A DNA stretch of 64,000 nucleotides, taken from Glycera tridactyla. Its lineage: Eukaryota. Position numbers and translations under genes: made by a program. The stretch is from NCBI GenBank assembly GCA_965644265.1, contig OZ286461.1:66154001-66218000 (forward strand), in the 5' to 3' direction. The notes beneath the pieces are model-generated. The model saw only the letters and a list, made by a program, of their open reading frames with translations, had not been told where the DNA came from and did not search any database. Shown one piece after another: positions 2,111 through 63,455 of the stretch (positions are counted from its first letter, which is position 1; every line of letters starts with the position of its first letter).

Positions 2111-2211
2111 CTATAGCAGGTCCTGGATGCGAACAGTCTTACGCACTGCATTGGTGTATCCCTCTTTGAAGCAGAACCATATATCCCCTCCAATGAGTTC
2201 TTTATTCTTTT
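2111..2211 (-). CDS. CHTF18: CHTF18 terminal coding exon (KNKELIGGDIWFCFKEGYTNAVRKTVRIQDLL*)
   Basis: Acceptor ttcttgttttgcAG, phase 1, TAG stop at 2111-2113. Peptide matches the recalled human C-terminus VWFRFNEGVSNAVRRSLYIRDLL (Dcc1/Ctf8-binding tail). The track ORF 2041-2241 is a different frame. Confidence 0.92.
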
Positions 2212-2433
2212 CTGCAAAACAAGAATATTGAAAAATTTCAAATTTGTGCATCCTTCAGTAAGCTTTCACAGAGTTCATAGAGAACATATAAATGCATGTC
2301 GAGTAACCACAGTTCATTATAGAATATCAGATGATTGTTTGTATTGACTGATCTCAGCCCATTGCAACTGTCAGAGCCTGGGGGTTCTGATCTTCCCAGT
2401 ACTGCTGTTAGCTATTTATGGGTGACAGACATA

Positions 2434-2579
2434 CAGATGAACCTCTCCATGAGGACTGCCTTTGGGCTTTTAAAGGGAGATGGTCTTTATAGAGATGTCA
2501 TTTACTGTTGAAAATAATACCACAGTCGCAGCTCAGGGTGGTGTTTATAAAGAAGTGGTCTTTAGAGGAGATTCGACTG
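2434..2579. mobile_element. pogo/Tigger-like MITE, degraded
   Basis: TA|cagatgaacc...ttcgactg|TA; same family as 1330. Confidence 0.65.
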
Positions 2580-5548
2580 TAATCTCAGCAAGGTGCAACT
2601 TTGCCTGTGATTGAATATTGTACCCTCCTCTCCTCTAGTGTCTTTAATGCAATTGCAGTGATACCGTGGCTGAAAATCCAACTTGCCGAGTATTCAGTAT
2701 CTGAGAAGATTGTCATTACTCATGAACAAATGAATTGCCACAATGAAGGGCTTTCAAGTTCAGCATATACAGTATCTGACATCATGGCAACGGTTGCACA
2801 TTGTGAGCTAGCGCCATGTCTCCTATGTACCTGATCATTCCTTTATATAAAGGAACATTTCTCATGAAAAGTTAATGGTGTAACTCTTTGAATTGTTGAT
2901 TATTTATTGCGAGATTGAAATTTTAGATCACCAAATTTCGAAAAATTGCATATTTTTGAGGATATGATGTGCAATATCATCAAGTTTATGAGGAAAAAAA
3001 AAAGTTACATGTTTCATAGGATATCTATTAAGACATCACACAGAATCAAGGGCAAATTATTCATGTGAATCTTCACAAGACATGGCACTAGTGAAATATA
3101 CTGAGTGATGGATTGTAATTTGTGGTTGTTATAGTCACCATGGCAACCATAGTGATAGTGATGGCATCAAAACATGCCTCATATGAAAGGCCATGTTCTT
3201 TCATCCATCTATACTTCCATTCATCGGGGGTCAGTGGCAAGTGTGTTTTTTCAATATTCAATATCAGGGCAGGTGTTGGATCCAATTCTGAAATCATCAT
3301 GATTTGCATCAACGACATGAGTTATGTTTTCATGTCACAGTGTTCACTCTCAGCTGCACCCCTGAGTCAAAGGACGCGATATTAGAGTGCATGACCCCTG
3401 CTCCATGACCCCTGCTCTATACATCGGTGGTCCAATACACTTTCTACTCTCTTCTCTGCATTGTTTACTTTACAAAAATGATCTTGAATGAGTAAATGTC
3501 GCTATGATATGAGTTATTATTCATGGGCATCCAAAGCCAGTGTCCCCTGTACCAATGGTGCTGTCCCCCATTTTGAAAGTACGGGTAAATGGGACAAATG
3601 TCCCCACTCAGACAAGAGTCAGAGTGAATACTGCATGATACCTATCCAATGAATGCAACTGCAGCTTTTCCACATTTGGGTCAAGTGTGAAAGACGCTGA
3701 CACCACACCATGTGGGACCAATATCTGAAAATTCGCAGTTTGCTACATTCTAGGCTGCCAATACTGAATTGAATAGACCGACCTCTTCATCACCAGTTTC
3801 TTGGACAAACAAAATTTCCTAAATCAATGAGATGAGTGGTTGAGGTCGGACATAAACTTTTGATGATTGAGAAGAGTAATATTTGGCATCTGACATTTGG
3901 AGGATAGGTCAATGAGTTTTGGGGGTGGGGGAGGGGCAAGAGTCCATCTGGTTAGTTACTATGGTTCAGTACACCTCTCTTTCCATTTCTCTTAGTTTCA
4001 GTTATTCAGCGAGAAGATAATGGAATCATATTTTCTGCATCACTTCCAGCCGACTACCTCTGGAGACTTTCTTCTGTTCCGGGCCATTAATCTCGCGTCC
4101 ACTACATTACTGATGACCAGTCGACACCGGTGGCAGCACACGTGTATCATAAACACAAGGTATTTGCACAAGACGTCCATTAATTTCATTGTGACGATGT
4201 CTGTTATCCTTGGCCCAGTAAGTCGAGCCTCCCACAAGATGCGAATCACTTTATTAGATAGTTAGCTTCAAGCCGAGTGTTGACGTAACCTTTGTTAGAA
4301 TCACACGATCCATGTGTGCCTGCACCTGACACCAGATGTCAGGTTGGGGCTAATTTCACTGATGCGGCTTGGAGCCCCCCTCCACATGGTCTCCAGACAA
4401 TCAGTGAAGTGGCAGGTGTGAGTGGGACAGGAGTCAATATTCCTTTAATCTTGGCTGGGTCGTCAGGTCTACCTTCTTGAGGGGGTTTGAAATTTGAGGT
4501 GCCCGAAACCCCTACCTGGTATTTCACTGATGACCTGCCCAACTCAGCTATGGTTGTTCATGGTTCTGCTGATGTGGTCATGTGCTGGACAGGTAAGCAG
4601 TGTTCGCTCCGACTCCTGCCTGAGCGGGGACATTTGTCTCATCAACTTCCAAAAGAAGGGACAACACCACTGGAACAGGGGACACTCACTTCGTAGCTCA
4701 CTTAAAAGCATGTATCAAAGCGACACAATGTATTGATGATTGATTTTGTGAAGAAAACAATGCAGAGAAGGTATCAGCAGGAGTAGAAGGTGTTATGAAG
4801 ACAAGGGTCAGTGCTGTAAGTACTTTACTGGGTTGTCAGAGCTCTCTTACTGAGTCAACATCCTACCAGCCTGACTGGGTGTCAAATTGGACACTGGGCG
4901 CACCAGTAGATACAAAAGGGGTCATACACTCCTAAGGATGAATGAGGCAATTTTTTGAAAATTTGCCACATCCTTGAAATTTCATATGATTATTTCTAGT
5001 GAGGTATAGATCAGATTTCCTGAAAAAAAAGTTGGGGTCACCAGGCTCGTTTTTCGGCAGTAGCTATTTATATAATTGTTGAAATATTGAGAAACTGCAA
5101 AAAATGCCAAGATACAGTTTCATCAAGAAACATTACATAAACACCATATTTGAATGAATCATCACAGCGATGGTCGCTGCTTGCTAATTCGAGGTCATCT
5201 GATTATTAGGTATTTTGACAGAAATGACTGGTCATTCGAAAGAGGTGATGACTGTCCCTCATCAGGTGGTCACTCGTGACAGGTTCGACTGTATTCCAAA
5301 AAGTCTGTTCCCATCTCTCTTTTTTTCCCTCCTTTACACAATGCCGCCCTCTCCACACTTCATTGAGTAATGAATAGATACTACATAAATTCACAATGAA
5401 TGCTTGGTTGGTAATACTACCTCTCTGCCAGGAAGTAAAAGCAGGAAAGGAGATCAATGCCACTAAGCGCCAATCCCAAGATCAGGCGTAATCTAGCACT
5501 TTCTGTCATATAAGCAGCTGCCATTTCATCACTAAGATATCCACTTAC

Positions 5549-5599
5549 TTTTTTCATTTAAGAATCCCAAACCTTCATGGTAATGAGTTGTAATTGACT
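5549..5599 (-). CDS. CHTF18: Candidate 51-nt symmetric (phase 1-1) cassette exon of CHTF18 (SITTHYHEGLGFLNEK)
   Basis: cacttcAG acceptor and perfect GTAAGT donor; stop-free in the CHTF18 frame; length divisible by 3. Weak pyrimidine tract and no homology support. Confidence 0.4.
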
Positions 5600-5615
5600 C
5601 TGAAGTGTTTTAATA

Positions 5616-5792
5616 CAGTGAAACCTGCTCGAGAGTAAACCTGCGCTAGGCAAAATCCTGTCTTAAGCACATACCCCACAATCGGCCCGGCTGTTTTTTT
5701 CTCACTATAATTGTCCTGCGCTAAGCAAAATCCTGTCTTAAGTGAAAGAAAAATTTGGTCCCGTGACTTTTCACTTAAGACAGGTTTCACTG
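5616..5792 (+). mobile_element. pogo/Tigger-like MITE (cttaag family)
   Basis: TA|cagtgaaacc...ggtttcactg|TA; reverse-complement copy at 26766-26942. Confidence 0.8.
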
Positions 5793-5961
5793 TATGACGT
5801 CAAAGCATGTCTGAACACCAATGTCCTAAAATAACCCTTTTTTCACATGTCCCGTGTAACGCCGAAATCAAGAAAGCGTCACTTAGAAGACCATATCTTC
5901 CCAGATTATTGAGATATTGTCACATAATATAATATCACATAATTGACACATAACATCAATA

Positions 5962-6138
5962 CAGTCAAACTTGTCCTAAGCAAGACTTGCACTAGGCAGG
6001 AACTTGTCTGAAGCAACAGGTTTTTGTTCTACCCGTGGAGTATATTTCACTATAATTGACCTGTCCTAATCATGAACTTGCTCTAAGCACACAGTATTCT
6101 CACTTCCCAATGCTTCATGCTTAGGACAAGTTCGACTG
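5962..6138. mobile_element. pogo/Tigger-like MITE
   Basis: TA|cagtcaaacttgtcctaagc...gcttaggacaagttcgactg|TA. Confidence 0.75.
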
Positions 6139-6944
6139 TAATATAATCTAGGTGATTGCAGAAGGATTTTCCGTATGCTGAGAATGCTGTGGATGTGGGG
6201 TACACTGATGCTCATCCCAAAAAAATGTGTCCCGTTTTTCGCCTGGAATAGTTTTATGAAATTTGGATGAAAATTCTGTAAAGTTTCAGATATTCAGAGG
6301 GCTAATTGCTTGATAATTCTCTGGTCCAGGGTCTTGGTAATGTAAATCAATTGAAGTTTGATGACTTTATCCACCAGTATGTATACAGCACGGAGAAGAA
6401 AAGTGTGACACGAAATGTGCGGTGATGAATTTTGGAGACTCATAAACTATTTCATAAAGTTCAAGTTTTTTTTCTAGCTGTTCCCTAGGTGAACAACATG
6501 CTTTTTCCTTTAAGTGAAAAGTGTGACATAGAATGTCCGGTCACACATATTCCATTATCTAATACTTGTAATAATGGCGAAAACTGCAGATAAACCAACT
6601 CTAGAACAGCAGGAAGATGTCATGGGTTGTTTGTGATGAAAATCATGGTCAGGGGTCTCAGAACATAAACATCGTGCATTGTGACGAGGTATGCTAGATT
6701 CCTGTAGTGAAAGTCTATTTTTCAGATAATATTTTCAATGAATTTCTAAAATTCATGCTTCAGTTTTTAATATTAATTGATATCTAGATGTATGGAGATA
6801 TTGTTAAGCTTCAAATCACTTTTTATTTCATGAAAATCAGAGAAGTTTCAAGGAAGATATTGCAAATTTCATGCAACAGGGTTGGTCTGGTTTGATGAAA
6901 GCAGATGTTACACTGTGTGACGCCTGATCTTGGCGTAAGGTGCT

Positions 6945-7240
6945 GTGAGTGTGGCTAATTTCGAGGCTGTAGTTGTCAATTTGTTTTTCCTTCTTTCAGT
7001 CAATAACAAAAATGTTAAAATTATACAACCATAACAGATGCTAACATTTCTATCTAACATCACATTTGGCAATCTGTTCTGCGTAGGACACGAGTGTGCT
7101 GCAAATGTGGCTAATTCAGATAATGGAGTTGTCAAGTTTTCCCCCGTATTTTCGGCATTAATAATAATGCAAAATTATACAAATATAACATAAGCTACCC
7201 TGTCTCCAACATCACATTTGGCATTCTGTCCTTTATTCAG
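6945..7240. repeat. Old ~150-bp tandem duplication
   Basis: tgtggctaatt..gttgtcaa..aaaattataca..aacatcacatttggca occurs twice. Confidence 0.6.
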
Positions 7241-7249
7241 GATTCGCCA

Positions 7250-7760
7250 CTATTATGTTCGCGGTGGTATTTCCAAGTTGATAAAATGTGGGAATAACAC
7301 TGGAAATTGCGAGCGAGGGCAATGTAGGCCATCTTGTTGCACTGTCACGGCCAATCGTGCCGGCCTACCAAGTCAGAGGTCAGCGTCAGCCACCTGCCCA
7401 CTTTTACATCCAAGGTGCACAATTTAATTTTAGCGCCGGCGTAATCTACTTGTACAAGACAATGAGCACAGCTTGAGACTTGGCTCCTCGCTAATTGAGT
7501 TAACAGACAATTAAATTAGCTCGCCGCATCGGCCCGCGCCCGCACCGCGCCAGTCACAAACAGTTGGTATTTGATGGCGAGTTGTAACCCTGGCGCTTGC
7601 GCTACGACGTTTTGATATATCTAATTTATCCCCTGCCAGACACTGATGACATTAAATAGAAGCGTTTGTGCCCTGTGCAGAGATGCGTCCCATCAAATAT
7701 TTACGCCAGTCATGATCACATTAGCGACAAGTCCATTTTCTAATTTGTACGCTCAGTGAA
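7250..7760. promoter_or_regulatory. Putative enhancer-like island
   Basis: No recognisable repeat, CpG-rich, clustered TAAT/ATTA and ACAAT sites, no ORF. Confidence 0.3.
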
Positions 7761-8005
7761 TCATTCAGGCTTCTCAATCTAGACTGACTTGTCTCTACTT
7801 GTCACTCATTCCTATGCCCAACTTGTCTCTGTTCACGTGCACCTATTTTGTTATAGTTTCAAGAGATAATTGAAAATGTATAGAAATGAAGAAATGTATA
7901 GAATGAACCTACTTTTCACTCATTCCTACGCCAAAAATCATCTCTGTTATTTAGTTATATCCACAGCAGCAAATTGAAATTGTGCTTCTATCATATACAA
8001 AACAA

Positions 8006-8910
8006 GTCATTACTTTGTGTAAGTTTGGTGCATATCCATCAGAGCTGGCTTGAGTTAGAGTGTAAAATGAGGAAATCTATAAATAGCTCCTGTGACCTTG
8101 ACCTTTGACCTAGGGTCACACGCATCGGAAGGGAGGTGGCCTACCATGAGGTCATTACTTTACGTGACTTTGATGCATATCCATTCAGGCTAACTTGAGT
8201 TAGAGTGTGAAAAAAGAAAATTTATAAATAGCTTCTGTGACCTTGACCTTTGACCTGGGGTCACATGCATTGAAAAGGAGGTGGCCTACCATTAAGTCAT
8301 TACTTTGTGTAAGTTTGGTGCATATCCATCAAAGCTCGCTTGAGTTAGAGTGTAAAATGGGGAAATCTATAAATAGCTCCTGTGACCTTGACCTTCAACC
8401 TGGGGTCACATGCATCGAAAGGGAGGTGGCCTACCATTAAGTCATTACTTTGTGTAAGTTTGGTGCATATCCATCTAAGCTCGCTTGAGTTAGAGTGTAA
8501 AATGGGAAAATCTATAGATAGCTCCTGTGACCTTGACCTTTGACCTAGGGTCACATGCATCGAAAGGGAGGTGGCCCAACATCGGGTCATTACTTTATGT
8601 AAGTTTGGTGCATATCCATTGAGGCTAACTTGAGTTAGAGTGTAAAATAAGAAAATCTATAAATAGCTCCTGTGACCTTGACCTCTGACCTTTGGGTACA
8701 AAAATCAAATTCTCGAATACGATTTTTTCATAGATCACAGTTATGAAGTTTTATGAAAATTGGACCAGCCAATTCAAAGTTATTGCATGAAATGTGAGCG
8801 GACGGACGGACGGACGGTCGTACGTACGTACGTATGTACGTACGTACGTACGTACGGACGCCGGAGGTGAAACTATTATACCCCGCTTTTTCAAAAGCGG
8901 GGTATAAAAA
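8006..8910 (+). mobile_element. Helentron/pearl-type non-autonomous element with ~4.7 x 145-bp internal satellite
   Basis: gtcattactt recurs at 8006, 8151, 8296, 8441, 8586; tgaccttgacctttgacc motif; (GGAC)n(GTAC)n; 15-bp-stem 3' hairpin 8876-8907. Confidence 0.8.
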
Positions 8911-8927
8911 TGTATAGTATGAAACTA

Positions 8928-9073
8928 CAGTGAAACCTGCAATGAGAGGCCACCTTAAATGTAACAAAAAAGCGGTCTCTCAAAAGAGGTGGTATCTCGT
9001 CAGAGGTACATTTGACTATGTCAAATACAAAAATTGCCCTGAAAATAGCGGTCTCTTGTCGAAGGTCTCACTG
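8928..9073. mobile_element. pogo/Tigger-like MITE (gagacc family)
   Basis: TA|cagtgaaacc...tctcactg|TA. Confidence 0.7.
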
Positions 9074-9747
9074 TATGTTTGAAAATACACCAATGGAATT
9101 TACAGATTACATTCTGAGATATCATTTGATTTCTTGTGGATGTTAACCTGGATCTCTAGCATGGCACCAACCGCCTATAGTGAACGAGCAAGCTGTCTTG
9201 TGTGCTGAGCTATGCAGACTGCTTTGTTGAAGCAGTTACACACTCTGCCGGGAGCACACGCCACTCCTCACACTTACCACCACAGTTGACCATCAGCTCA
9301 TACTCTTGTTCAAGCCGTTTGTGAAATGTTCTCGAGATGGGAGAAGATCAGAATGAAACCATGTTTCCAAATACACCAATGTATAGATAGTAAACTCTTC
9401 ATACATATTTCCTGCCACATACAAATTTCAATAAGGATTTAAGCATTCTAGGTTTAGTGATTTTGACTAAAGCATTTGAAAGTGTAGTATCTGTCATGCA
9501 ATAACAAAATTTGGCTTCAGAAAGTGTAATCATCACTCCGAAATCCCACCGGTTGGCATCTCTTGGTGACAATAATATATATTTGAAGTAGTGCTTGGCC
9601 TTGCTTGCAGAGAGTGATTATAGTCTCTGTATATTTGTCCCGCCTACTTTCAAAATTATGGACAGCAGCCTCGGACACGGGACACCGCATTCAGATTGCT
9701 CAAATCAGTAGATTATACCTCAGCTTCATTTTCAAAGAGAATGAATA

Positions 9748-10072
9748 CAGTGAAACCCGAGACTAGAGACCCTGTGACGAGAGACCACCACCAATGGAAG
9801 ATCGTTTTTTTCCAGAGCACCGTTCTTGTTTGACTATGTCAAACATACAGTCGAACCTCCGCTAAAGACCACCTCCCTATAAAGACTACCCTCAACTGCG
9901 ACCTTCAAAGTATTTTCAACAGTAAATGACCTCTCTATAAAGACCACCTCCCTATAAAGGCCACTTTTTTTATGCGACCGAAGGCGGTCTTTATAGGAGG
10001 TTCGACTGTAGATCTTCTGAGAGACTGCTATTTGGTGACATTTAGGACAGTCTTTCATCGCAGGTTACACTG
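9748..10072. mobile_element. Outer pogo/Tigger-like MITE interrupted by a nested MITE
   Basis: TA|cagtgaaacc...ggttacactg|TA with a second element at an internal TA. Confidence 0.75.
9848..10008 (-). mobile_element. Inner MITE (taaagacc family), reverse orientation to 27556 and 31417
   Basis: TA|cagtcgaacctc...gaggttcgactg|TA. Confidence 0.8.
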
Positions 10073-10400
10073 TAGAATGAAGATAAGTTTTGTGCTAAAA
10101 TCCATGCAGAGGAGGTCATATTTGGAATAGGAAATTCACGACTGAGGATGGGTTAATGCTATAAGCACCTTAGCCGATGGTCAGAGCTCTCATATTGAGG
10201 TCAAAGTCAACATTCTACCTGCCTGACTGGCACTGAGATTGCTGACTCCTGCTGCAGCAATCATGCAAAATGAGTCATCCACCCTAATATTGGGACATTT
10301 GGCACAGTGGCACAGCCGACAACTAACACCGTATGGGTTCATCATGGTCATGGATGGATGTATATTTTTTTTCTTTATCAATTTGAAAGAAACCACTTAC

Positions 10401-10467
10401 CAATTTTCTCTTGTTTTTTCTTCTGAACAGATTTGCTGATTGGCCGTCCGAAAAAGTCAACAACTTG
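10401..10467 (-). CDS. CHTF18: CHTF18 internal exon (67 nt; QVVDFFGRPISKSVQKKKQEKI)
   Basis: Strong acceptor ttctttttttgcttctttgattgcAG, donor G|GTAAGT; encodes the conserved Ctf18 DFFGR motif; phase 0 to phase 1. Confidence 0.92.
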
Positions 10468-10954
10468 CTGCAATCAAAGAAGCAAAAAAAGAATCAGTCA
10501 TCTTACTTTCAATCACATGTGAAGATGAACATAGCCTTCACTGAAGGCGGACCTCGCCTTGGCGAAGCCACACAACACGCCGCTTCAAGAAAGGCATTTA
10601 TATCTAAAGTTTACACAAACAAAACAGTGCTGCTTCTTTGATGGGTGCATACAGTTCCTGATTGCATAGGAAGACCCAATACATAATTATGCTTGGAAAG
10701 GTACTTTTCCTCAAAAAATCTTTTTGAAAAAGTAAATTTCTCTAAAATAACAGTACAGGGCTCTACGCTAGTGGTTGCCCTACTGGCACAGGCAGGCAGG
10801 TGATTTTATCAATCTGCCTGCCCGATGGACAGGTACCCAATCCTCATTTGGGCTATGATTATATGCAGGAAGGCAGGTGAAAATGACAGGGAGGGCAGGT
10901 AAAAATCCTACTTCATCTGCCCGAATGACAACTGAAGAAAAAAGTTAACGGAAA

Positions 10955-11590
10955 GCTATGAATTGCATCCACGCCAAGTTTTGTGTGGCTATGAACAGCC
11001 ACCATCTTCAAAAAGATCCATATCTGAAAGATCAATTTTCACCCCAAAACCAACCAGGCCCTCTGGGAGACCCCAACCATGGCTGGCATTCGTTAGGAAA
11101 TGCTATGAATTGCATCCATGCCAAGTTTGGTGTGGCTATGAACAGCCACCATCTTTAGAAAAATCCATTTCTGAAAAAAAAAAACAATTTTCACCCCAAG
11201 ACCAACCAGGCCTTTTAGGAGACCCCATCTATGGCTGGCATAACAGCCACCATCAATAGAAAAATCCATTTCTGAAAAACCAATTTTCACCCCAAAACCA
11301 ACCAGGCCTTTTGGGAGATCCCATCTATGGCTGGCATTCATCAGGGAATGCTATGAATTAAATCCACGCCAAGTATGGTGTGGCTGTACACAGCCACCAG
11401 CTTTGGAAAAATCCATTTCTGAAAAAACAATTTTCACCCCAAAACCAACCAGGCCCTTTGGGAGACCCCATCTACGGCTGGCATTCATCAGGAGATGCAA
11501 TAAAATGCATCCTTGTTGAGTTTGGTGTTCCCGGGACTCAAAAATCACTGAAATTGTCAGAGTCCAGTCATTTAAAAAAAGTGAGGTTTT
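10955..11590 (+). repeat. Satellite family J (146-bp unit plus truncated ~87-bp units); dispersed pieces at 31305-31410, 48690-49030, 59790-60420, 60660-60880 (minus)
   Basis: gctatgaattgcatcc at 10956 and 11102; recurring ttttcaccccaaaaccaaccaggcc. Confidence 0.8.
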
Positions 11591-11619
11591 ATCCCAAACT
11601 TCGATACATCAGACGACTG

Positions 11620-12206
11620 GCATGCATATGGCTGTGGTGATGGTTGGATGTCCCCCCCCTCCCCCCCGCGAATACACTGGAGCATGTGTACATCAAATCA
11701 CAATCACAACCCTGAACTGAAATACTGAAGCTGTGAAGGGTAAACATCCCCTGTAACACAATGGATATGTATGCATGAAAACTGGTGATGGTAGGGGCCA
11801 TGGTTGTGGAGCCAACAAAAACTTTGACGTGAAGTTCATATCCTCAAAAATATGCATTTTTCACCCAAAAATATGATAAAAAACTGGGATGATGCTGAAA
11901 GAATGAATGGACACCTTTCCCAATACTTGGGAGAATGTGTCTATGGAATCTGGTGGTGGTAGGGGCCTTAGTTGCTGAGCTACAGACTTCGATGAAAAAC
12001 TTTGACGTAAAACTTTGACTTAGTGCTCTCTCAATATCATTCCTGATGTATTATAGCCCATGTGCAAAAGATCTGATGATGGTAGAAGGGTTAAAAAAAA
12101 ATTTTGACATGAAATCTTGCAAAAAAAAAATTTGACGTAAAACATTTTAAGAGTGCGGACGCCGAGGACAATACCTCTCTTCAACTTCGTTGAGGCGAGG
12201 TAAAAA
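11620..12206 (+). mobile_element. Helentron-type element
   Basis: Internal repeated ggtgatggtaggggcc/actttgacg units; 3' hairpin tacctctcttcaacttcgttgaggcgaggta. Confidence 0.6.
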
Positions 12207-54294: not shown

Positions 54295-54800
54295 ATTAGG
54301 GTACCTTTTTGGTGAAATTTCAGTGAAATATTTGCCCCTGGTGATCTTGAAAATCATGTCACATGGACCAAAATCTAATCAGTTAATTGGACCCTCCCAA
54401 GGGGTATGCCTGCCAAATTTCATCAAATTCGGATGAGTAGTTTTACTGCAATCGTGCTCACAAGGTTTTGTGACAGACAGACAGACAGACAGACAGACTG
54501 ACAGATGATCCAGGGTTGCATCCAGGTTTTTCTGAAATGGGGGCATTGGGCCCCTCAAATTGGAGAAAAGGGGGCATTTCTCCACAGAATGTCCCAAAAT
54601 GGGTTCACTAAACATGACATAGTGCAAACTTTTTGTTGATTTAGGGGGCATCAGGGCCCATGATTGCCTCGAAAAGGGGCCCACACTGGAAAAATGTGTG
54701 AAATGCCCCCATGCCCCCCTCTGGATGCAACCCTGCAGATGTGCAGACGGACAGACGGACAATACAAATTCTATATGTCTCCCCCATCGGGGGAGACATA
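54295..54800 (+). mobile_element. Helentron-type element (3' part) carrying a nested hAT MITE
   Basis: gccaaatttcatcaaa motif, (GACA)n, hairpin tatgtctccccc/gggggagacata. Confidence 0.7.
54511..54735. mobile_element. hAT-like MITE nested in a Helentron-type element
   Basis: Perfect 15-bp TIR cagggttgcatccag/ctggatgcaaccctg. Confidence 0.8.
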
Positions 54801-57451
54801 ATCAGGATCGAGATTACAGCGAGGCTTCGTCTCCGACTGCCGCTGGGCGATATTAGAGGAATGATGGAATAGCCACAAATGGCGATCTTCCATCTGTTTA
54901 TCCATGCTAAATACCAATAATACAGGTTCCATGACTTTTCCATGACTTTTGGTCAAATTACAAAGTTCCATGACTCTTCAAAAATAATTTTTTTCCAGGT
55001 TTTCCAGACCCTATGGGAACCCTGCTTTAGGGAACCTGACTGAAATTTATGATGGTGCACATCTATAAGTCAATGATAGTCGAACAATCGACAGACCTAC
55101 TATATTATCCATCTAGTTGGTACAGTGTATCCTTGATGCACATGGTACATACAGCCAGAGCATCTCTACTTCTTCCAGGACCTTTCAAGGCCCTAGGTAT
55201 CATTTTCAAGGCCCAAACAATGATGCATGAAATTATCAAAATATGACTTGACTGTTACGATAAAGTAATGCTGCATGAATCAATCAATCAATGGAGTATG
55301 ACTTTTGTCTGTAACCTCTTGGCTCATTAAATGTGTTACCAGAGAGACAAAGCATTCAGTCCACTTGTGTACTAGCTCAACCCTTTTCTGCCACAATTGT
55401 TATGGTAGCCTTCACAAAAAACTAGTTCAGCCACTCTTCCATTAGGTCCTGAAAATAAATTCATTCTCCCAAATTTATCCAGAAAGTGCAAGGAAAACAA
55501 GCTCAAACTGGGCCATCTTGAAAGCAAGCTATTTGTGTGAGCAAATGCCTTATCATGACGTGAATTCCAACTCATCCGTCATGTGAGAGACTATCCTGCT
55601 TGATCTACCACCAAGACAATCATTCATTTCAAGGCCTTTCCAGCCCTGATGGTAAGCCTCAGGGTCAGTTTCAAGGACTGTTAAAGTCCTGTGTGAACCC
55701 TGATACATAGCCCTTTTCTTGCCTGCCTGGTTTGTATTTTACAGAAACTATCACACTTAATTCAGCAATACAAATATGCCTCTACCATCGCAGTTTCATG
55801 AAGAATGCTCTAATTGATTTTGCTCTAATCAATGCCATCTATTAGATTAATTTTCTTATTAAACAATTAGCGAGCCTAGATTTGATTAATACCACATAAT
55901 GATAATAATGCTCTCTGCTCATTAAAATTATATTCATCACAAATCAAGTGTAATTATTCAAGTACAGTATATTTGACATCTAGCAAGCAATATCAATGTC
56001 CTCATTTGCAATCAAGAAGGGACACAAAACAATGTATGGAAGAAACGATGGCATCTGAGTCTTCGACCACAAAACATTTTGAGATCAAAAAATGTTGAGC
56101 TGGTCCCCTTGCTGGATATTGGTACAGTTGAACCTACTCGAGAGACCACCTCTACACAAAGACCACCTGTCTATGGAGGCAACTCTGAACTGCGACCTTG
56201 ATAGTACTTTCAACAGGGTATAACCTTTAATTTTATATATCAGCTACAATATGGTTCAGTACAAACTGATGATAATGATGCTAATGATAATTCTCGCGAA
56301 GGACTGATGTGAGTATGTTTTTACAGTTAAATTTGCTCATGACACCACAAAGGTCACCGATGTATTCAGACTCAGTGGAAGGCCAGCACCAGCACCAGCA
56401 CCAGCGCCAACATCAATGTGTAAATTGTAGAATCTTGCATTGCTCTGATTGGACACTTATTCATAGTGGAGTTCTTTTATTACTGCTCATCATTCAGATT
56501 GATAAGCAAGTATCAGACAGTTGAGGCTGCAGTCTTTGAATTTAGCCACTCTCCCGAATCCCGGGGAGTGTGAATTTGGTTTTGAGAGAGTAAATATTTT
56601 TCCTTCGATCAGAAAGTGATGAATTTATTGTGAAGATAGTACTCCACAGTTTCGGTCCCACCAACCAAAAAACCTATCCACTATGAGATGACTTTGTACA
56701 TACTTGGACATGTACAATGCTGAAGAATAAACATCAGCAAAACATAGATTAGTGGTGCTCCAGTGGTCACTCACATGACAGATGAGTTGAAATCTTGATT
56801 AGACATTTACTCACTAAAATGTCTTGCTCTCAAAATAATATAGTTTGAGCTTGTTTCCCTTTCTAAATATACACAGATTTGGGAGAGTGAATTCATTTTT
56901 GGGAGCGTGATTCCTCTGGACTGAAAGCGTATTTTGTTTTGGCATGATGATAATGTCAGCCTGGCTGCCACGCCCGCCTGCAGCCTGTATGAATATCAGT
57001 ATCGAAATGTGTCTTACCCATGAGATGGACGTTTACAATGACAGATTGTTCTGGGGTGCTTGCTCATTTGGCATCATGCAATAGGTGAAATATAATAAGA
57101 AAAACATTTTTGGTGGCTAAAAGCAGTCATTCAGGAGAGTTGCTTGCTCATTGGAGGGCCACTCATATACACCATGTTAAACCGCGCAAAAGTCATAACA
57201 CGAAGAAACACGAGGTGTCGCTTCTCGCAGGAGCGGCCGCGTGCAACAGTACTTCCGCTCTCTCTTGATAATAGCTGTGTTAGCACTCTTTCCCAGTACA
57301 GCTGAACCAGTAGATAAATGGTAGTGGTGGTGGTGGTGGTGGTGGTGGCGGTGCTAGTGGTGTTGGTGGTGAAAAACAGCCTTCCTCGGCCATAGAGGGG
57401 TAAGTGAGAAAATGTCTCAAGAAGCACTCAACCAGAAGTGGCGTTGATCGG

Positions 57452-57720
57452 TGAGTTCACAGGTCAACTGTTAGAAGGTGTGGAAGCCATGGCTCAAAGC
57501 TCGACGGCCCCTTTGAATTCACAGGAAAACTGTGAAGGTGTAGAAGCCACGGCTCAGAGCCCGACAGCCCCCTTTGAGTTCACAGGTCAACTCTGAAGGT
57601 GTAGAAGCCACGGCTCAGAGTTCGATGACCCCGTCTGACTTCACAGGCAAACTGTGAAGGCGTGAAAGTCACACCTCAAAGCTCGACAACTGCCTTTGGC
57701 TTCACAGGTAAGCTGTGATA
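57452..57720. repeat. 61-bp minisatellite, ~4.5 copies, palindromic unit
   Basis: ttcacagg at 57456, 57518, 57579, 57640, 57701. Confidence 0.85.
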
Positions 57721-57762
57721 GTGTCGATGCTATGACTGTGTGTTTGTTTGTTTGCGTGTGTG

Positions 57763-57764
<2 letters not shown>

Positions 57765-57824
<60 letters not shown>
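57765..57824. repeat. (TA)n(TG)n microsatellite; others: (CA)n 1814-1835, (ATTG)n 18805-18825, (GGTT)n 23668-23716, (TG)n+polyG 35993-36033, (CAGCAC)n 56382-56408, (GGT)n 57325-57350
   Basis: Directly visible. Confidence 0.9.
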
Positions 57825-57826
<2 letters not shown>

Positions 57827-57889
57827 GAGTAGGTCTGAACCGGAAGTGGTGGTGCACGAGCAGTACGGCTCAATAATGCCCCGACTATT

Positions 57890-57904
57890 CCACCAGATGG
57901 CGCT
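57890..57904 (+). promoter_or_regulatory. CTCF-like motif CCACCAGATGGCGCT
   Basis: Close match to the CTCF core CCASYAGRKGGCRS; non-repeat context. Confidence 0.4.
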
Positions 57905-58250
57905 TTTCGGTGCCCATGAAATCGGCAACCTCGTGGTATATAGGAAGTTTTACTGTAGTCAATTGATGATTGACTTAGTTCCAAACAATCATTGATTCAG
58001 AATACCTCACTGATTGGTGACACTACACAATTATTCTACACTAATCTACTCTGCTGATGCATGTTCAGTCTTTGCAAAAATATTTTCAGCCATTCATCCA
58101 TCAGGAGAGCAGATTGAAAGAATCATTCTCCCAAAAATGAATTCACTCTTCAATGATGAAAGCAAGTGAACTTATGCTATCTTGTGGGTAAGTTACTTGT
58201 GTGAATGAATGCCCAATCTAGTTATGCCTCCAACTTATCCATGTCATGTA

Positions 58251-59091
58251 CAGGGTTCGTAGTGGTTGGGTGAAATGGTTTTTCAGGACATTTTCAGGAC
58301 ATATCCAGGTTTTTCTGGACACATGCCATGGTCACGAATTTCACAGATTATGCCTCATAAATCGACATCATACACTGTGTTCTCACAACATTTACAATCA
58401 CTAATCGCCACGGTGCCATTCTTGGGGTTTCGTCGCATGAGCTTTGAAGTTCCATTTTTGTTTCCGTCGCAATCGGATAGATGCTGCAAAATTATTTGCG
58501 ACATTGAAATAACGTGAAACTGCCATCTCTCACATTTTATCTGAACTGCACTCGTAGCTCAAGCGCCCGGGCCACATCATCGCCTGACTTTCGTTCCATT
58601 TTTATCCGTCGCAATCCGAGTGGCACTTATCAATCATTCACACATTGTTCAACATGGAACTGCCATTTCTCGCATTTTATCCAAATTGCATTCGAAGAAC
58701 ACATGATAGCCTGACTTTCGTTTCATTTTTATCCGCCACAATCCGAGTGGCGCTGATCGAAAATTCGCAAATTGACTAACATGAAACCGCCATCTCTCGC
58801 ATTTCATCTGAACTGCATCTTGGTTCTTCCTGTATATACATGCGACTACCACCCTGTGGACTGGCGCCACAAATAAACAAACGTAATTAGCGATGGGTTA
58901 GTGTGTCAGATTTCGCCTTTGTCTTCTTGAAAAACCGTTGAGGATTAGATTTAACCCCCATCACGCTTGATTTTCAGGACAAACACGCATTATTCAGGAT
59001 ATTGGCGGCGTTTTCAGGACAAGTTCAGGACATTTATTTTTAAGGACAAATTACCATTTTTCGGGACATTTTCAGGACGCTGCAAACCCTA
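58251..59091. mobile_element. hAT-like non-autonomous element with three internal ~130-140-bp repeats
   Basis: cagggttcg...tgcaaacccta ends, subterminal ttcaggaca repeats, flanks atgta/acgta. Confidence 0.65.
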
Positions 59092-59829
59092 ACGTAAGTG
59101 ACTGCCAACCTACCAACCTAGTTTTCCCTAAGGTTTGTTCTTCAGAACAATACATGTGCAGGCATATGCAGCTCCAGCCATCTTTCAGGGAATAGGAACT
59201 GCTGTCGCTGCAGGCAAAATTTGATCCAGTACTTTCCAATCATATGAAAACTTCACAATCTCCTATCAGGAGAGTGGGTTTGGCCTTTTTACTCTCCCAA
59301 AAAGCAATTCACTCTCCCATGAGATTCGGGAGAGTGGCTAAATTCAAAGACTGTACACAGGGAAAGATGAGGCACTAACCATCTACTCGCAGTCTTGCCC
59401 ACCATGGCTAGACTAGATCTAATAACCACTTCATTATTTCTTAGATGCCCATCAACAGCCAGTGCTGAATAATGAAGGACTCTCCAAATTTTAATTGATG
59501 TAAATCAATTAAATGCAAATTACAGACAATTATGTTGCAAAATGAAAGAAGGCACATGGCAATTAGTGCGCAAACCTAATAAGCAGTCTCACTACCGGCA
59601 AGATGCAATGGCGAAAATCCTGACGTCAAAGCAAGCACAAACTATGAGATCCTTCAGTATTACTTTCAAGTGAAGTCATGTTCAGGACATCCTTGCTGTT
59701 TTACAATGGTCATGATCATCAGATGCATGAAGAATCTCATACATGTTTGACGCCCATCAGGGGATACTATGCTATGAAAGGCTTCTACATTATGTCTGCC
59801 AGAAAAATCCATCTCCGAAAAATAAATCC

Positions 59830-60270
59830 ATTCACTCACAGAGAGCCAAGGCAAAAACATAATACCCCAATTCACCCGCAGAAAAACAAGGCCAAAACAT
59901 TCTACCCTAATTCACCCACAGTGAGCCAAGGCAGAAACATTCTACCCTAATTCACCCACAGTGAGCCAAGGCAAAAACATACTACCCCAATTCACCCACA
60001 GAGAGCCAAGGCAACAACATACTACCCTGATTCACCCGCAGTCAAGGCAAAAACATATGACAGTACTCCTATTCACGCACAGAGAGCCAAGGCAACAACA
60101 TACTATCTCGATTCACCCAGAGAGCCAAGGCAAAACATATTATAGTACTTCAATTCACCAGAAGAGTGCCAAAGGAAAAAATATTCTACCCCGATTCACC
60201 CGCAGAGAGTCAAGGCAAAACATGCTACCCCGATTCACCCACAGAAAGTCAAGGCAAAAACATACTGCTC
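59830..60270. repeat. 40-bp minisatellite, ~11 copies
   Basis: Unit attcacccacagtgagccaaggcagaaacattctacccta. Confidence 0.85.
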
Positions 60271-63200
60271 TTTCAGTGTGAATACCAGTGGGGCACAAAA
60301 CGCATATTTGTCCCCAAAATCAATCAGGCTAATTTGAAGACCTCATACATAACTGCTATTCATTAGGGGATGCCGTGAGATATGACTAAACTCTACATCT
60401 TGTGTGGCTGGGTACTGAAAACTCAACAGACATGTCAAGAGTCCATAGCCTTCACCAAAGCTGCCCTCTCTCAACAAAGCCAGCTCAAACCCCTCAAATA
60501 TATGCAACACACTGGGACAAGCTGTGAATCTCAACTTAGCTGATGCCTGGTAGAGGACTTCATACGCGGCTCATATTCCTCCGAGGGTGGCTAAGGACAG
60601 CCACCTTCCCAGGAATAATCAGTCTGACCAGATTTGACTTAATATATCTAATATACTTCATAGTATTCACTAATGCATGCTGGCCATGGATGGATTCTCC
60701 CAACAAGCCTGATTGATTTTAAGGACAAAAATGCATTTCATGACTCACTTTCGAAGAAACAGGATATCACAGTTACATCATGAAATGGATTTTTCTGGGA
60801 TGTTGTCTTTCCCTAGCCACGCCAGACTTGACACAGATGCATTTCATAGTGTTCCCCAATGAATGCCGGCCATGGGTGAGGTCTTCTGACCATTCTGATT
60901 TTCAGTTTTGTTGACGCAGTTCATGCCGATACAAAACCCCCCCTAAATTTCACCTGAACTTGATCAGTTCCCAGAGTGAATAACAAGTTTCCCTCATTTT
61001 CTAGGGATAAAATAAATCCAATATCAAGGGCTTTTTTATGGCCAAAAGTGCACTTTCAAATTTGATGACTTTTGCAGATTTCCAGGGCTTGTGGAAAACC
61101 TGCTTCATGCAGAAGAATGTGTGTTACAGGCGACTGCTACCATTAATTATACAAAGCAGCCGTATATGAAACCTGCTTAATACGTGGCGGGTAGTAGACC
61201 CTTACACAAGATGATGCAGTGTGATGCAAACAACAAAGAACGCCAGGAGTGTGCTAACTTTATTAATAAAGCATCCCCGCAGGAAGAATAATATGATCTA
61301 TGATGTTATTACGGCTAATTTGGTATTACTTATATATTTACTGGTAATCAAATTCGCCACGCCTGTAATGACACAATTTGTCTTGGGAGAAGATAACATA
61401 ACTTGTAATAATCAAATCAGCCGATGGTGCTAAAGCATTTTGCAAAAGTTGTTACTCAAAATTACCGTTGGCAGGTGTTCTCGCCCATCATATTTTACCT
61501 GCCATCAGTCTTAATTTGCGACAGGTGCACCAATTTTAATATTACGGACGGAGCTGGTGATCCGATCAGAGACATCCCCGGCGGTGGTGCTGGTATGTGT
61601 GGCCATACATCACATGGTGTCAGAGTGTGACACGATGGATAGTGATGACGTGTCGCCATGAGCGACGACGCATCATCTTTGTGCACCCTCCAGAGGTTCG
61701 CTCGCCGTGTTGCCTCCCCCGTACATTCCATCAACGCACGGATCTGCCACCCCATGATGCAATTTCTGCACCGATTATGAGTCGGGGTTGGACTGGCGAG
61801 GCAAAAGTTTAATAATTTACCAGAAAGCTAATTAACTTCGCTGATCCGAAGATCATCATTCTTACAGCTTCCGTCGACACGAGCTACGGCAATATTAGGA
61901 AGATATAATGTAATTAAAAATGCTGACCAAGCACAATTTCTATCCATCAAGAAGCGGTGACCTCATATCTCCATTCCTTGTGATGTCAATAAGATATGGC
62001 AACATTTTTAAAGATACAGTAAAACCTGTGACAAGAGAGTGTGATAAATACCACTCAAATGCAGTCTCCCAAAATAGGTGGTCTCTCCAAAAAGAGCTGG
62101 TTTCGGTATATACAATAAATATTCTTGAAATATCTCCATATAAAGTCTAAATTATCATCCGCACATCTTTGTTGTCTTTTGACAATCTTTTAGACCTACT
62201 GATGCCTAGAGTGTGCCCCATCAATCAGCAAAAATAAGTGAAAACGACAGGTTTTTGCTGATCTCCGGAACATGGATGTGCTTTCCGGAAAAGGAATCTC
62301 ACAATTCCAGTATTTTCCAAGAACACTAGAGGAGAATACATGATTTCCAGAAATTTCCGGAAGAGTCTGTGCAAACCCTGTGAATATGTTCAAATAAAAA
62401 ATCATCAGGTGGTACCATTTTGGGGTTAGTCAATACAAGATAAAGACTGAAGTTTATAAGTTATAGCTTGTGAAAAACTACTGCAAGAACTAAATAGCAT
62501 GATTAGTGTAAGCAGAAAAGAAAAAGCTGAGCCAATTTGGGTCACACCCACAAGCCCCGCTATTTGCTCAACCATTAGGATGGCTCGCTAATTATCTTGC
62601 ATGACGCCTTCATCCAAATTAGCCATTAATTCCATCACACTCAACCTCACACTCCATAAATCCTCTCCCATGGTGGCTGCCATCGTAACTCCGGTCGGTC
62701 ACTTCTCAAACACCGTCATCCACCATCATTACAACAGCTCAAAATCACTTCATTACTCCAAAATGCATTAATCACAGAAACACAACAACACTCAGCATCA
62801 TTAAAAAGTAAAGCCGGAGAAAATGTGACCTATTTTATCCAGTTCAGTAATTTGTGATGAATGATGCTCTATATGAGCATCACAATTACAGGGATGCCAA
62901 ATTTTGATGGTCGAAAATAGTAATTTTGCCAATTATCAAGAGTAATCATACCAATATTCGTAATGATCAAATATGAAAATTCCAAATTTCTTTATGGTAA
63001 TGTTATGCATGAAATGCTCCAATTTTTGCTTAAAAGAGTAATAATTACTCCACAATCATAATGGTTGGCAACTTTGTAATCATTGCTCAGGTATATCATG
63101 GAATACGTGAGGTGAAAAATAGATGGAACTTCAAAATGAGCCACTTATTCAAGAAAATGTGTCAAATCAATGAGAGAGATAACATGGACTAAGGGTTGTC

Positions 63201-63328
63201 CTGACTTGATTAGTTCCACTATTTTTGGCCGTGTGATATGCAACGAATCAATGATGCGATTTTACGACACTTAACACAGACATGGTTAACAGAGGTGAGA
63301 GCATTAGACATGCCGATCTAACATTCCA

Positions 63329-63343
63329 CCACAAGAGGGCAGT
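63329..63343 (+). promoter_or_regulatory. CTCF-like motif CCACAAGAGGGCAGT
   Basis: Near-consensus core 60 bp from a CHTF18 exon. Confidence 0.35.
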
Positions 63344-63402
63344 TAGGCTGTGGATCTAGTTGCTACGGCAACGGTAATATAAACATCGCATCGCCTACTT
63401 AC

Positions 63403-63455
63403 GTCTCAAATGTCCCCTGGGCCGTCTCTCGACGTCTCATCTTTTCAAGATCAAT
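63403..63455 (-). CDS. CHTF18: CHTF18 internal exon (53 nt; IDLEKMRRRETAQGTFE)
   Basis: ctttcAG acceptor and GTAAGT donor on minus strand; phase 0 to phase 2 joins in frame to the 52970-53165 exon; peptide matches the recalled Ctf18 motif EIE(V/L)EKMRR. Too short for the ORF track. Confidence 0.85.

What the first reader, a model, noticed from the sequence alone, without database searches (positions are those of the whole stretch)
2111..63455. Housekeeping clamp-loader gene CHTF18 with giant introns full of enhancer-like islands: probable bystander of a regulatory block
Seen: about 140-155 codons of the CHTF18 C-terminus occupy 61 kb, with introns of 42.5 and 10.2 kb. Between the TEs lie about 12 repeat-free, CpG-retaining, TAAT/Sox/E-box-rich islands of 0.3-0.9 kb. 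Known: human CHTF18 is compact (about 10 kb, recalled), and giant introns in housekeeping genes beside developmental regulators typify genomic regulatory blocks (e.g. ELP4/PAX6, LMBR1/SHH). Inference: these introns hold long-range enhancers for a neighbouring developmental gene. No target gene is inside the window. Human CHTF18 lies on 16p13.3 near LMF1/SOX8 (recalled), so SoxE is one candidate to test.
Basis: partly seen in the sequence, partly recalled or inferred. Interest (0 to 1): 0.7.

Follow-up and report, generated by a model that had tools for sequence, protein, structure and literature searches.

The report
CHTF18 tail introns beside a homeobox gene
The last four exons of a DNA-replication gene (CHTF18) are spread over 61 kb next to a nerve-cell-type homeobox gene, and since this neighbourhood and its one oversized intron recur in a brachiopod and a ribbon worm, the introns probably hold that gene's control switches, though no switch activity was shown.

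Summary
On the minus strand, four CHTF18 exons (63403-63455, 52970-53165, 10401-10467, 2111-2211) give 138 open codons. All have AG/GT splice sites. The introns are 10,237, 42,502 and 8,189 nt, and the N gap lies deep inside the 42.5-kb intron. A spliced contig from a public run matches exon 52970-53165 exactly.

The window holds 13 non-repeat islands that keep their CpG. They are rich in TAAT, but not in Sox or E-box motifs.

There is no HMG/Sox gene within 21 Mb. A paired-like homeobox gene (Homeodomain + OAR, Drgx-like) lies convergent, about 45 kb beyond the CHTF18 stop codon. The same convergent pair occurs in Lingula and Tubulanus. In both, the homologous intron just before the DFFGR exon is the largest in the gene.

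In this genome, 46 introns of CCT and MCM housekeeping genes have a median near 0.9 kb and a maximum of 13.6 kb.

This is most likely a genomic regulatory block with CHTF18 as bystander, a new member of a known kind. Enhancer activity and sequence conservation among close relatives could not be tested.

The parts
63403..63455 (-). CHTF18 exon EA (IDLEKMRRRETAQGTFE..), 53 nt
   Evidence: AG acceptor and GTAAGT donor, in frame with the upstream exon at 72.3 kb. Carries the EKMRR motif of the orthologs.
53166..63402 (-). Intron, 10,237 nt
   Evidence: Lies between EA and EB.
52970..53165 (-). CHTF18 exon EB, 196 nt, a poorly conserved linker ending in ..SPLPNHLRQTLTPK..
   Evidence: AG/GT sites and frame. 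Ortholog motif VP.NH..KL.PK. A spliced contig of run X1 covers exactly 52970-53165 (table 8, record 1).
10468..52969 (-). Intron, 42,502 nt as assembled. Holds the N gap 32259-32452. It is the positional homologue of the largest CHTF18 intron in Lingula and Tubulanus.
10401..10467 (-). CHTF18 exon EC (QVVDFFGRPISKSVQKKKQEKI), 67 nt
   Evidence: AG/GT sites and frame. DFFGR motif shared with orthologs.
2212..10400 (-). Intron, 8,189 nt
2111..2211 (-). CHTF18 last coding exon (..IWFCFKEGYTNAVRKTVRIQDLL) with stop at 2111-2113
   Evidence: PDB match to human CHTF18 951-975, ending at the stop. tblastn with orthologs.
7151..7900 (.). Non-repeat island: CpG o/e 0.94, TAAT 21 per kb
   Evidence: 7233-8003 is single copy in the genome.
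20101..20850 (.). Non-repeat island: CpG o/e 0.93, TAAT 15 per kb
   Evidence: 20007-20765 is single copy.
24251..25250 (.). Non-repeat island: CpG o/e 1.0, TAAT 18 per kb
   Evidence: 23651-25153 is unique apart from a 65-bp piece.
39551..40100 (.). Non-repeat island: CpG o/e 0.86, TAAT 24 per kb
   Evidence: Not searched in the whole genome.
42101..43000 (.). Non-repeat island: CpG o/e 0.93, TAAT 20 per kb
   Evidence: Only 41530-41875, beside it, is an old repeat.
46101..47200 (.). Non-repeat island: CpG o/e 0.99 (57 CpG), TAAT 11 per kb
   Evidence: 45801-47096 is single copy.
49151..49850 (.). Non-repeat island: CpG o/e 0.87, TAAT 19 per kb
53251..54100 (.). Island just upstream of exon EB: CpG o/e 1.08, TAAT 17 per kb
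58201..59150 (.). Island: CpG o/e 1.01, TAAT 8 per kb
61151..62050 (.). Non-repeat island: CpG o/e 0.94, TAAT 27 per kb. Holds a TAATnnnATTA site at 61906.
   Evidence: 60885-62023 is nearly single copy.
63201..63750 (.). Island around exon EA: CpG o/e 0.90, TAAT 18 per kb
16401..16800 (.). Small island: CpG o/e 0.94, TAAT-poor (2.5 per kb), next to a LINE fragment
29751..30700 (.). Island: CpG o/e 1.06, one third repeat-covered, TAAT 5 per kb
15776..16267 (-). Reverse-transcriptase fragment (retroelement) inside the 42.5-kb intron
   Evidence: Pfam RVT_1, E = 3.9e-15.
2432..2582 (.). Short interspersed repeat of about 150 bp, thousands of copies at 80-93% identity
   Evidence: 4991 first-look candidates.

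Best explanation
The window holds the 3' quarter of a CHTF18 orthologue. CHTF18 is the large subunit of the CTF18-RFC clamp loader, a replication and cohesion housekeeping gene.

The whole gene spans about 114 kb on the minus strand. Its AAA+ part has introns of 0.2-1.2 kb. Its last six introns measure 3.9, 11.4, 8.9, 10.2, 42.5 and 8.2 kb.

About 45 kb beyond the stop codon, pointing toward it, lies a paired-like homeobox gene with an OAR motif. From my recollection of the vertebrate DRGX homeodomain I take it to be a Drgx orthologue, but I did not test this.

I propose that the two genes form a genomic regulatory block. In this model, cis-regulatory elements of the homeobox gene lie downstream of it, in the intergenic DNA and in the 3' introns of CHTF18. 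CHTF18 is then a bystander that cannot be separated from its neighbour.

Shown here: the gene structure; the neighbour; the conserved convergent pair in two other phyla; the same enlarged intron in all three species; the contrast with housekeeping introns in this genome; and single-copy, CpG-retaining, TAAT-rich patches.

Inferred: that the patches are hypomethylated in the germline because regulators bind them, and that they act on the homeobox promoter.
For: (1) CHTF18 identity and structure. The Walker A, Walker B, CICN and sensor-2 exons were found, and tblastn chains with named orthologues run from about 116.5 kb to 2.1 kb.

(2) The neighbour. Homeodomain exons lie at window -48.6, -47.9 and -45.9 kb and an OAR exon at -43.4 kb, all on the + strand. 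Pfam Homeodomain E = 2.4e-11 and OAR E = 2.1e-6, both above cut-off. The best PDB match is Aristaless, 31 of 35 residues. It is the only scored homeobox within 7 Mb.

(3) Conserved microsynteny. In Tubulanus polymorphus and Lingula anatina, CHTF18 is followed 4.5-4.6 kb downstream by a convergent Homeodomain+OAR gene. Their homeodomains are near-identical to this one (23/25 and 34/36 in the middle homeobox exon), and Lingula shows the same exon breaks.

(4) The same intron is enlarged. The intron just before the DFFGR exon is 17,282 nt in Tubulanus (others at most 1.9 kb), 7,888 nt in Lingula (others at most 2.9 kb) and 42,502 nt here. It is not the largest in seven species that show no homeobox within 10 kb. 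The big introns of Tubulanus and Lingula hold no long ORFs and little detectable repeat.

(5) Housekeeping controls in this genome. Forty-six introns of CCT and MCM genes have a median near 0.9 kb and a maximum of 13.6 kb.

(6) Landscape. The homeobox side is repeat-poor with CpG o/e 0.6-0.83. The compact CHTF18 part has CpG o/e 0.36-0.40. The window is intermediate, with 13 discrete islands. Tested islands are single copy and TAAT-enriched.
Against: No enhancer mark, chromatin contact or reporter assay is available.

No non-coding match between this locus and the Lingula or Tubulanus loci exceeds a reversed-sequence control.

At least 37% of the window is interspersed repeat, even when judged against only 264 kb of the genome. 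Much of the intron length is therefore TE insertion.

CpG-rich patches occur at a similar density on both flanks.

TAAT enrichment rests on 13 islands, with p of about 0.01-0.02 and no correction for multiple tests. TAAT is not enriched in the big introns of Lingula or Tubulanus relative to their other introns.

Linkage was not seen within 10 kb in three molluscs, three deuterostomes or a coral. The three linked species are all lophotrochozoans, so they are not fully independent.

Branchiostoma CHTF18 is 98 kb with no homeobox neighbour, so this gene can grow large for other reasons.
Confidence: 0.55

Rival explanations
1. Neutral bloat. The 3' introns are long only because transposable elements accumulated in a gene-poor stretch of a 2-Gb genome. 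The unique patches are old, decayed sequence without function, and the linkage to the homeobox gene is retained by chance in slowly rearranging lophotrochozoan genomes.
For: At least 37% of the window has another copy within 264 kb. There are reverse-transcriptase fragments and a SINE-like family with thousands of copies. An old repeat of about 340 bp sits in one 'unique' stretch. No cross-phylum non-coding conservation was found. CpG-rich patches are common on both flanks. Earlier notes of this scan report 60-133-kb introns elsewhere in this genome.
Against: CCT and MCM genes of the same genome keep introns near 1 kb, with a maximum of 13.6 kb, as does the AAA+ part of CHTF18 itself. The same intron is the largest in Lingula and Tubulanus, where it holds no long ORFs and little detectable repeat. 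About 33 kb of the window has no second copy in the 264 kb, an upper bound on non-repeat DNA, and the tested islands are single copy genome-wide. TAAT enrichment is specific to the window's islands.
Confidence: 0.3
2. The enlarged intron is conserved because it hosts something other than enhancers of the neighbour. Candidates are an unannotated nested gene, a non-coding RNA, alternative CHTF18 3' exons, or regulatory elements of CHTF18 itself.
For: Branchiostoma CHTF18 holds a nested GPCR gene in a giant intron. Islands with CpG o/e near 1 could be promoters. Only 4 kb of the window was laid against transcript contigs.
Against: There is no Rfam family or tRNA in the window. Ten of the longest window ORFs gave only a reverse transcriptase and a low-complexity repeat in Pfam. 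No genes are called inside the Lingula or Tubulanus introns, and they hold no long ORFs. In 51000-55000 the listed long contig pieces of X1 other than exon EB lie over repeat-like stretches and carry many mismatches.
Confidence: 0.1
3. One reading: the introns hold enhancers of a SoxE gene.
Against: All 120 HMG-box candidates of the genome were scored. The nearest on contig C7 lie at 21.5 and 44.8 Mb, more than 21 Mb from the window. No Sox motif turned up in the six-frame scan of 264 kb. Sox binding motifs are at chance in the islands.
Confidence: 0.02

Closest known systems
Genomic regulatory blocks with bystander genes, such as Isl-Scaper and Otx1-Ehbp1 (Irimia et al. 2012, PMC3514665). PAX6-ELP4 and SHH-LMBR1 are recalled, not checked here.
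   Same: A developmental transcription factor sits next to an unrelated housekeeping-type gene. The housekeeping gene has several introns above 10 kb, and the linkage is kept across phyla. The paper states four predictions. The first two are met here, and microsynteny is conserved.
   Different: Conserved non-coding elements and enhancer activity, which define the classic cases, are not shown. The pair is convergent (3' to 3'). Linkage is documented only in three lophotrochozoan lineages. Much of the intron length here is TE.
CHTF18 / Ctf18 of human and other animals (PDB 8umt and relatives; named orthologues from Lingula, Pecten, Tubulanus, Branchiostoma)
   Same: Walker A and B, sensor 2, the DFFGR motif and the C-terminal ..W..F.EG.(S/T)NAVR....IQDLL tail all end at the same stop. 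Identity to lophotrochozoan orthologues over matched exons is 44-55%.
   Different: The gene span is about 114 kb, against 15-29 kb in eight other invertebrates examined and 98 kb in Branchiostoma, where the giant introns lie elsewhere, in the AAA+ region.
Drgx (dorsal root ganglia homeobox, Prrxl1) and other aristaless-related paired-like homeobox genes
   Same: It has a Q50 paired-like homeodomain with an intron at position 46/47 and a C-terminal OAR motif. The best solved-structure match is Aristaless. The N-terminal flank and the homeodomain agree best with my memory of vertebrate DRGX.
   Different: Assignment to Drgx rather than Alx or Arx was not tested with a tree. The protein search returned no named relatives.

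Membership tests
CHTF18 (CTF18-RFC large subunit) | AAA+ module with Walker A GPPGxGKT, Walker B DEIDG, and a sensor-2 region | tested here: met
   Minus-strand exons at 95.4, 94.6, 93.5 and 92.3 kb in the flank. Best matches are named CHTF18 proteins.
CHTF18 (CTF18-RFC large subunit) | C-terminal tail that binds Dcc1-Ctf8 / Pol epsilon, ending in ..NAVR....IQDLL | tested here: met
   Window 2114-2215(-) aligns to human CHTF18 951-975 and to yeast Ctf18 C-terminal peptides in PDB. Alignment of nine orthologues.
Genomic regulatory block (trans-dev gene plus bystander) | A developmental transcription factor adjacent to a functionally unrelated gene | tested here: met
   A Homeodomain+OAR gene lies at window -48.6 to -43.2 kb, convergent with CHTF18.
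Genomic regulatory block (trans-dev gene plus bystander) | [quoted passage not shown] | tested here: met
   Five introns of 8-42 kb in the 3' third, against a median near 0.9 kb and a maximum of 13.6 kb in 46 CCT and MCM introns.
Genomic regulatory block (trans-dev gene plus bystander) | Linkage conserved over long evolutionary distance | tested here: met
   The same convergent pair occurs in Lingula anatina and Tubulanus polymorphus. It was not seen within 10 kb in Lottia, Pecten, Elysia, Acanthaster, Ptychodera, Branchiostoma or Pocillopora.
Genomic regulatory block (trans-dev gene plus bystander) | Clusters of conserved non-coding elements in bystander introns | tested here: inconclusive
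   Only exons match between phyla. Non-coding hits do not exceed a reversed control. No close relative's genome could be reached, so the informative comparison was not possible.
Genomic regulatory block (trans-dev gene plus bystander) | Intronic elements act as enhancers on, and contact, the trans-dev promoter | not testable with these tools
   Needs ATAC-seq or ChIP, Hi-C or 4C, and reporter assays.
Drgx homeobox family | Paired-like Q50 homeodomain plus OAR motif | tested here: met
   Pfam Homeodomain and OAR are above cut-off. VWFQNRRAKWRK is present, with Q at position 50.
Drgx homeobox family | Groups with Drgx rather than Alx, Arx or Rax in a tree of paired-class homeodomains | not tested
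   No reference set could be fetched. The assignment rests on my recollection of the vertebrate DRGX sequence.

The most novel reading that the evidence does not exclude
An ancient lophotrochozoan regulatory block. On this reading, the intron just before the DFFGR exon of CHTF18 has harboured downstream enhancers of a Drgx-like sensory-neuron homeobox gene since before brachiopods, nemerteans and this animal's lineage split. The intron stays the largest in the gene (7.9, 17.3 and 42.5 kb) although its sequence has turned over completely. In this genome the elements would be visible as single-copy, germline-hypomethylated, TAAT-rich islands in an otherwise CpG-depleted gene body.
Probability: 0.4. 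Interest if true: 0.6.

Novelty: new member of a known kind. Interest (0 to 1): 0.45.

Why it matters
If it holds, this adds a clean, testable invertebrate example of a bystander gene locked to a developmental regulator.

- The candidate enhancer territory is small and sharply bounded: one homologous intron in three phyla.
- About a dozen named islands are ready for reporter assays.
- It would give access to the cis-regulation of a conserved sensory-neuron homeobox gene outside vertebrates.
- It would give a case in which intron position and size, rather than sequence, carry the signal of conserved regulation.

For genome annotation, it also explains why a housekeeping gene is eight times longer here than its peers.

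Tried and rejected
- **SoxE as target:** rejected, because no HMG box lies within 21 Mb.
- **PDB search with exon EC:** gave only a spurious RecA hit. The exon was accepted on the DFFGR motif, frame and splice sites instead.
- **Walker-A exon as search query:** considered and dropped, because I expected it to draw bacterial RuvB. A 70-aa CHTF18-specific exon was used instead.
- **Cross-phylum non-coding matches:** none above control.
- **Paired-type TAATnnnATTA sites:** only two in the window, so there is no case for them.
- **Sox and E-box motifs:** at chance.
- **TAAT excess in the Lingula and Tubulanus big introns:** absent.
- **Recursive-splice motifs (YAG|GTRAGT) on the gene's strand:** none in the window.
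- **Rfam and tRNA scans:** empty.
- **Naming the homeobox gene by protein search:** two unnamed hits only.
- **Paper searches** for a CHTF18-Drgx link, or for the homeodomain peptide: nothing. The supplement of Irimia et al. is not held.
- **Owenia locus:** withheld. Two ortholog look-ups found no record.
- **Ground rules kept:** the N gap was not filled, no human sequence was fetched or searched, and recalled human sequences served only as leads and were sent to no tool.
- **Joined exons:** the four exons were joined only inside a script, to count stops.
Full report
**Where the window lies.** The window is G000:C7:66154001-66218000 in a 2.04-Gb assembly. GC is 0.416 and CpG o/e is 0.52. By CHTF18 similarity the animal is a lophotrochozoan with no close relative in the databases. 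The best matches are Lingula, bivalves and an annelid, at 50-55% identity over matched exons.

**The gene.** CHTF18 runs on the minus strand. The last coding exon (2111-2211) matches human CHTF18 951-975 right up to the stop, and also matches yeast Ctf18 C-terminal peptides. I fetched 100 kb on each side. There I found the Walker A exon at window coordinate 95.4 kb, Walker B at 94.6 kb, the CICN exon at 93.5 kb and the sensor-2 exon at 92.3 kb. Further exons lie down to 72.3 kb.

A 70-aa exon searched against the protein representatives returned full-length proteins. Their sources name them CHTF18 in Acanthaster, Branchiostoma, Ptychodera, Tubulanus and Pocillopora. tblastn with these proteins chains exons from about 116.5 kb to 2.1 kb, so the gene spans about 114 kb.

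**The exon chain in the window.** Ortholog alignment shows a variable linker with three landmarks: EKMRR, VP.NH..KL.PK and DFFGR. All three are present on the minus strand with AG/GT borders and one continuous frame:
- EA 63403-63455
- EB 52970-53165
- EC 10401-10467
- ED 2111-2211

Together they give 138 codons plus the stop. The introns are 10,237, 42,502 and 8,189 nt.

The only public run that held part of the gene (X1, coded) contains a 272-nt contig that lies on exactly 52970-53165. It has 3 mismatches and continues 22 and 54 letters beyond the exon ends. This is what a spliced mRNA gives. The exon least supported by homology is therefore confirmed, borders included.

The N gap at 32259-32452 is more than 20 kb from either exon bordering its intron. 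It makes the 42.5-kb figure an estimate and has no bearing on the frame. I did not try to fill it. I joined the exons only inside a script, to count stops, and searched no joined model.

**Is such an intron ordinary here?** Earlier notes of this scan report 60-133-kb introns in Meis, MAGI and receptor genes of this genome. Those are developmental or neuronal genes. For housekeeping genes I mapped the Cpn60_TCP1 and MCM domains exon by exon. Forty-six introns between exons with contiguous model positions have a median near 0.9 kb. Three exceed 5 kb, and the largest is 13.6 kb. The AAA+ part of CHTF18 itself has introns of 0.2-1.2 kb, apart from the 12.5-kb intron just upstream of the Walker A exon. 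The run of 3.9, 11.4, 8.9, 10.2, 42.5 and 8.2 kb at the 3' end is therefore exceptional.

**The neighbour.** A six-frame motif scan of the 264 kb found one homeobox signature and no Sox, Fox, T-box, Pax, nuclear-receptor, Ets, GATA, Wnt, Runt or hedgehog signature. The gene lies on the + strand. Its homeodomain is split over exons at -48.6, -47.9 and -45.9 kb, with an intron at homeodomain position 46/47. An OAR exon lies at -43.4 kb. Pfam Homeodomain and OAR are both above cut-off. The best solved relative is Drosophila Aristaless.

The gene points toward CHTF18, and the two 3' ends are about 45 kb apart. Between them I found a DIRS-like retroelement and reverse-transcriptase fragments, but no other evident gene. 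From memory, the homeodomain and its N-terminal flank fit vertebrate DRGX best. I could not test this.

The genome-wide HMG-box search scored all 120 candidates and places the nearest one more than 21 Mb away. SoxE is therefore out. Among scored homeoboxes, the next on this contig is 7.5 Mb away.

**Synteny.** In Tubulanus polymorphus (nemertean), CHTF18 spans 29 kb and is followed 4.6 kb downstream by a convergent Homeodomain+OAR gene. In Lingula anatina (brachiopod), CHTF18 spans 20 kb and the same arrangement lies 4.5 kb downstream. Their homeodomains are near-identical to the one here (23/25 and 34/36 in the middle homeobox exon). Lingula shows the same exon breaks, and Tubulanus shares the WRKSERF extension.

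No homeobox was found within 10 kb downstream in Lottia, Pecten, Elysia, Acanthaster, Ptychodera, Branchiostoma or Pocillopora. The 10-kb limit means linkage at greater distance is not excluded.

**The same intron.** I mapped each orthologue onto its own locus.
- In Tubulanus one intron of 17,282 nt makes up 60% of the gene, and all others are at most 1.9 kb.
- In Lingula one intron of 7,888 nt stands out, and the others are at most 2.9 kb.
- Both lie two or three codons before DFFGR, the position of the 42.5-kb intron here.
- In the seven species without a detected homeobox neighbour, that intron is not the largest.
- Branchiostoma CHTF18 is 98 kb, but its giant introns (61.8 and 17.4 kb) lie in the AAA+ region, and one holds a GPCR gene.
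- The Tubulanus and Lingula introns have no long ORFs and little detectable repeat.

This correlation is, to my mind, the strongest evidence that the intron carries something the neighbour needs.

**The islands.** Self-comparison of the 264 kb shows that at least 37% of the window is repeat. Forty-two stretches of at least 300 bp, 33 kb in total, have no second copy there.

Sliding CpG o/e gives 17 patches in the window, 13 of them with little repeat cover, each 0.4-1.1 kb. In whole-genome searches, 45801-47096, 7233-8003 and 20007-20765 are single copy. 60885-62023 and 23651-25153 are nearly so. 41269-43018 holds one old repeat of about 340 bp.

At 4-kb scale the homeobox side has CpG o/e of 0.6-0.83 and few repeats. 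The compact CHTF18 part has 0.36-0.40, and the window is mixed. I read this as follows, as an inference. The gene body is methylated, as is usual for housekeeping genes in invertebrates with mosaic methylation. The islands escape methylation in the germline.

TAAT cores are enriched in the 13 islands: z = 4.05 against shuffles, 15.8 per kb against 12.1 in other unique DNA and 7.9 in repeats. Island by island, the median is 18 per kb, against 9.2 beyond 64 kb (p = 0.008) and 8.45 on the left flank (p = 0.02). Sox and E-box motifs are at chance. Paired-type palindromes are rare.

**What is missing.** No non-coding similarity to the Lingula or Tubulanus loci exceeds a reversed-sequence control. 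That is expected at this distance and decides nothing. No close relative, chromatin data or contact data could be reached. CpG-rich patches are about as frequent on both flanks. The TAAT signal rests on few islands, and it is absent from the homologous introns of the other two species. The window holds no Rfam family, no tRNA and no recursive-splice motif on the gene's strand.

**Comparison with the known.** Irimia et al. 2012 (PMC3514665) list four predictions for a regulatory block with a bystander:
1. a trans-dev gene next to a non-developmental gene;
2. extensive bystander introns;
3. conserved intronic elements;
4. enhancers in those introns.

The first two are met here, and microsynteny is conserved. 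The third is inconclusive and the fourth is untestable with these tools. I found no paper in the held library that links CHTF18 and Drgx.

**Verdict.** I put the regulatory-block reading at about 0.55, neutral TE bloat at about 0.3, and other intron cargo at about 0.1. It is a new member of a known kind, of moderate interest.

Noticed in passing
Flank, window coordinates 148000-164000 (L011-L012; L012:3-9334): A satellite array with a 31-bp unit (ATACCATGGAAGATATCACAGGGCTGGTATT), about 300 copies in L012 alone. It is 71-78% self-similar, has CpG o/e of 0.11-0.2, and runs at least 16 kb to the end of the fetched flank.
   Followed up: partly
L015:3856-7449 (window -26.1 to -22.5 kb), minus strand: A DIRS-like retroelement between the homeobox gene and CHTF18. 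It has open frames of 182, 155, 198, 499 and 128 aa, with weak reverse-transcriptase and tyrosine-recombinase (Phage_integrase) matches, and no second copy within the 264 kb.
   Followed up: partly
L022:5111-8099 (window -94.9 to -91.9 kb), minus strand: A Penelope-like element: a 467-aa frame with reverse transcriptase plus a GIY-YIG nuclease domain, preceded by a 551-aa frame with no family match.
   Followed up: partly
L024 (Branchiostoma floridae CHTF18 locus): Amphioxus CHTF18 spans 98.5 kb, with introns of 61.8 and 17.4 kb in the AAA+ region. An opposite-strand 7TM receptor gene is nested in one of them. The gene can therefore become giant without a homeobox neighbour.
   Followed up: partly
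L024, L025, L027: In Branchiostoma, Ptychodera and Acanthaster, the upstream head-to-head neighbour of CHTF18 is a PseudoU_synth_2 (RPUSD-like) gene. This is a second, deuterostome-side conserved pair.
   Followed up: no
window 2432-2582: A short interspersed repeat of about 150 bp with thousands of genomic copies at 80-93% identity (4991 first-look candidates).
   Followed up: no
window 51000-51270 and 54480-54750: Very high summed contig depth in run X1 over repeat copies, with many mismatches. These repeat families look abundantly represented in that (probably RNA) run.
   Followed up: no
window 23223-23771 and several flank sites: Long frames coding PTNQ-, HPSI- and WMDG-type repeats. These are translated microsatellites or minisatellites, not genes.
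   Followed up: no
Owenia fusiformis CHTF18 look-up: The record was returned as withheld, without DNA, so annelid synteny could not be examined.
   Followed up: no
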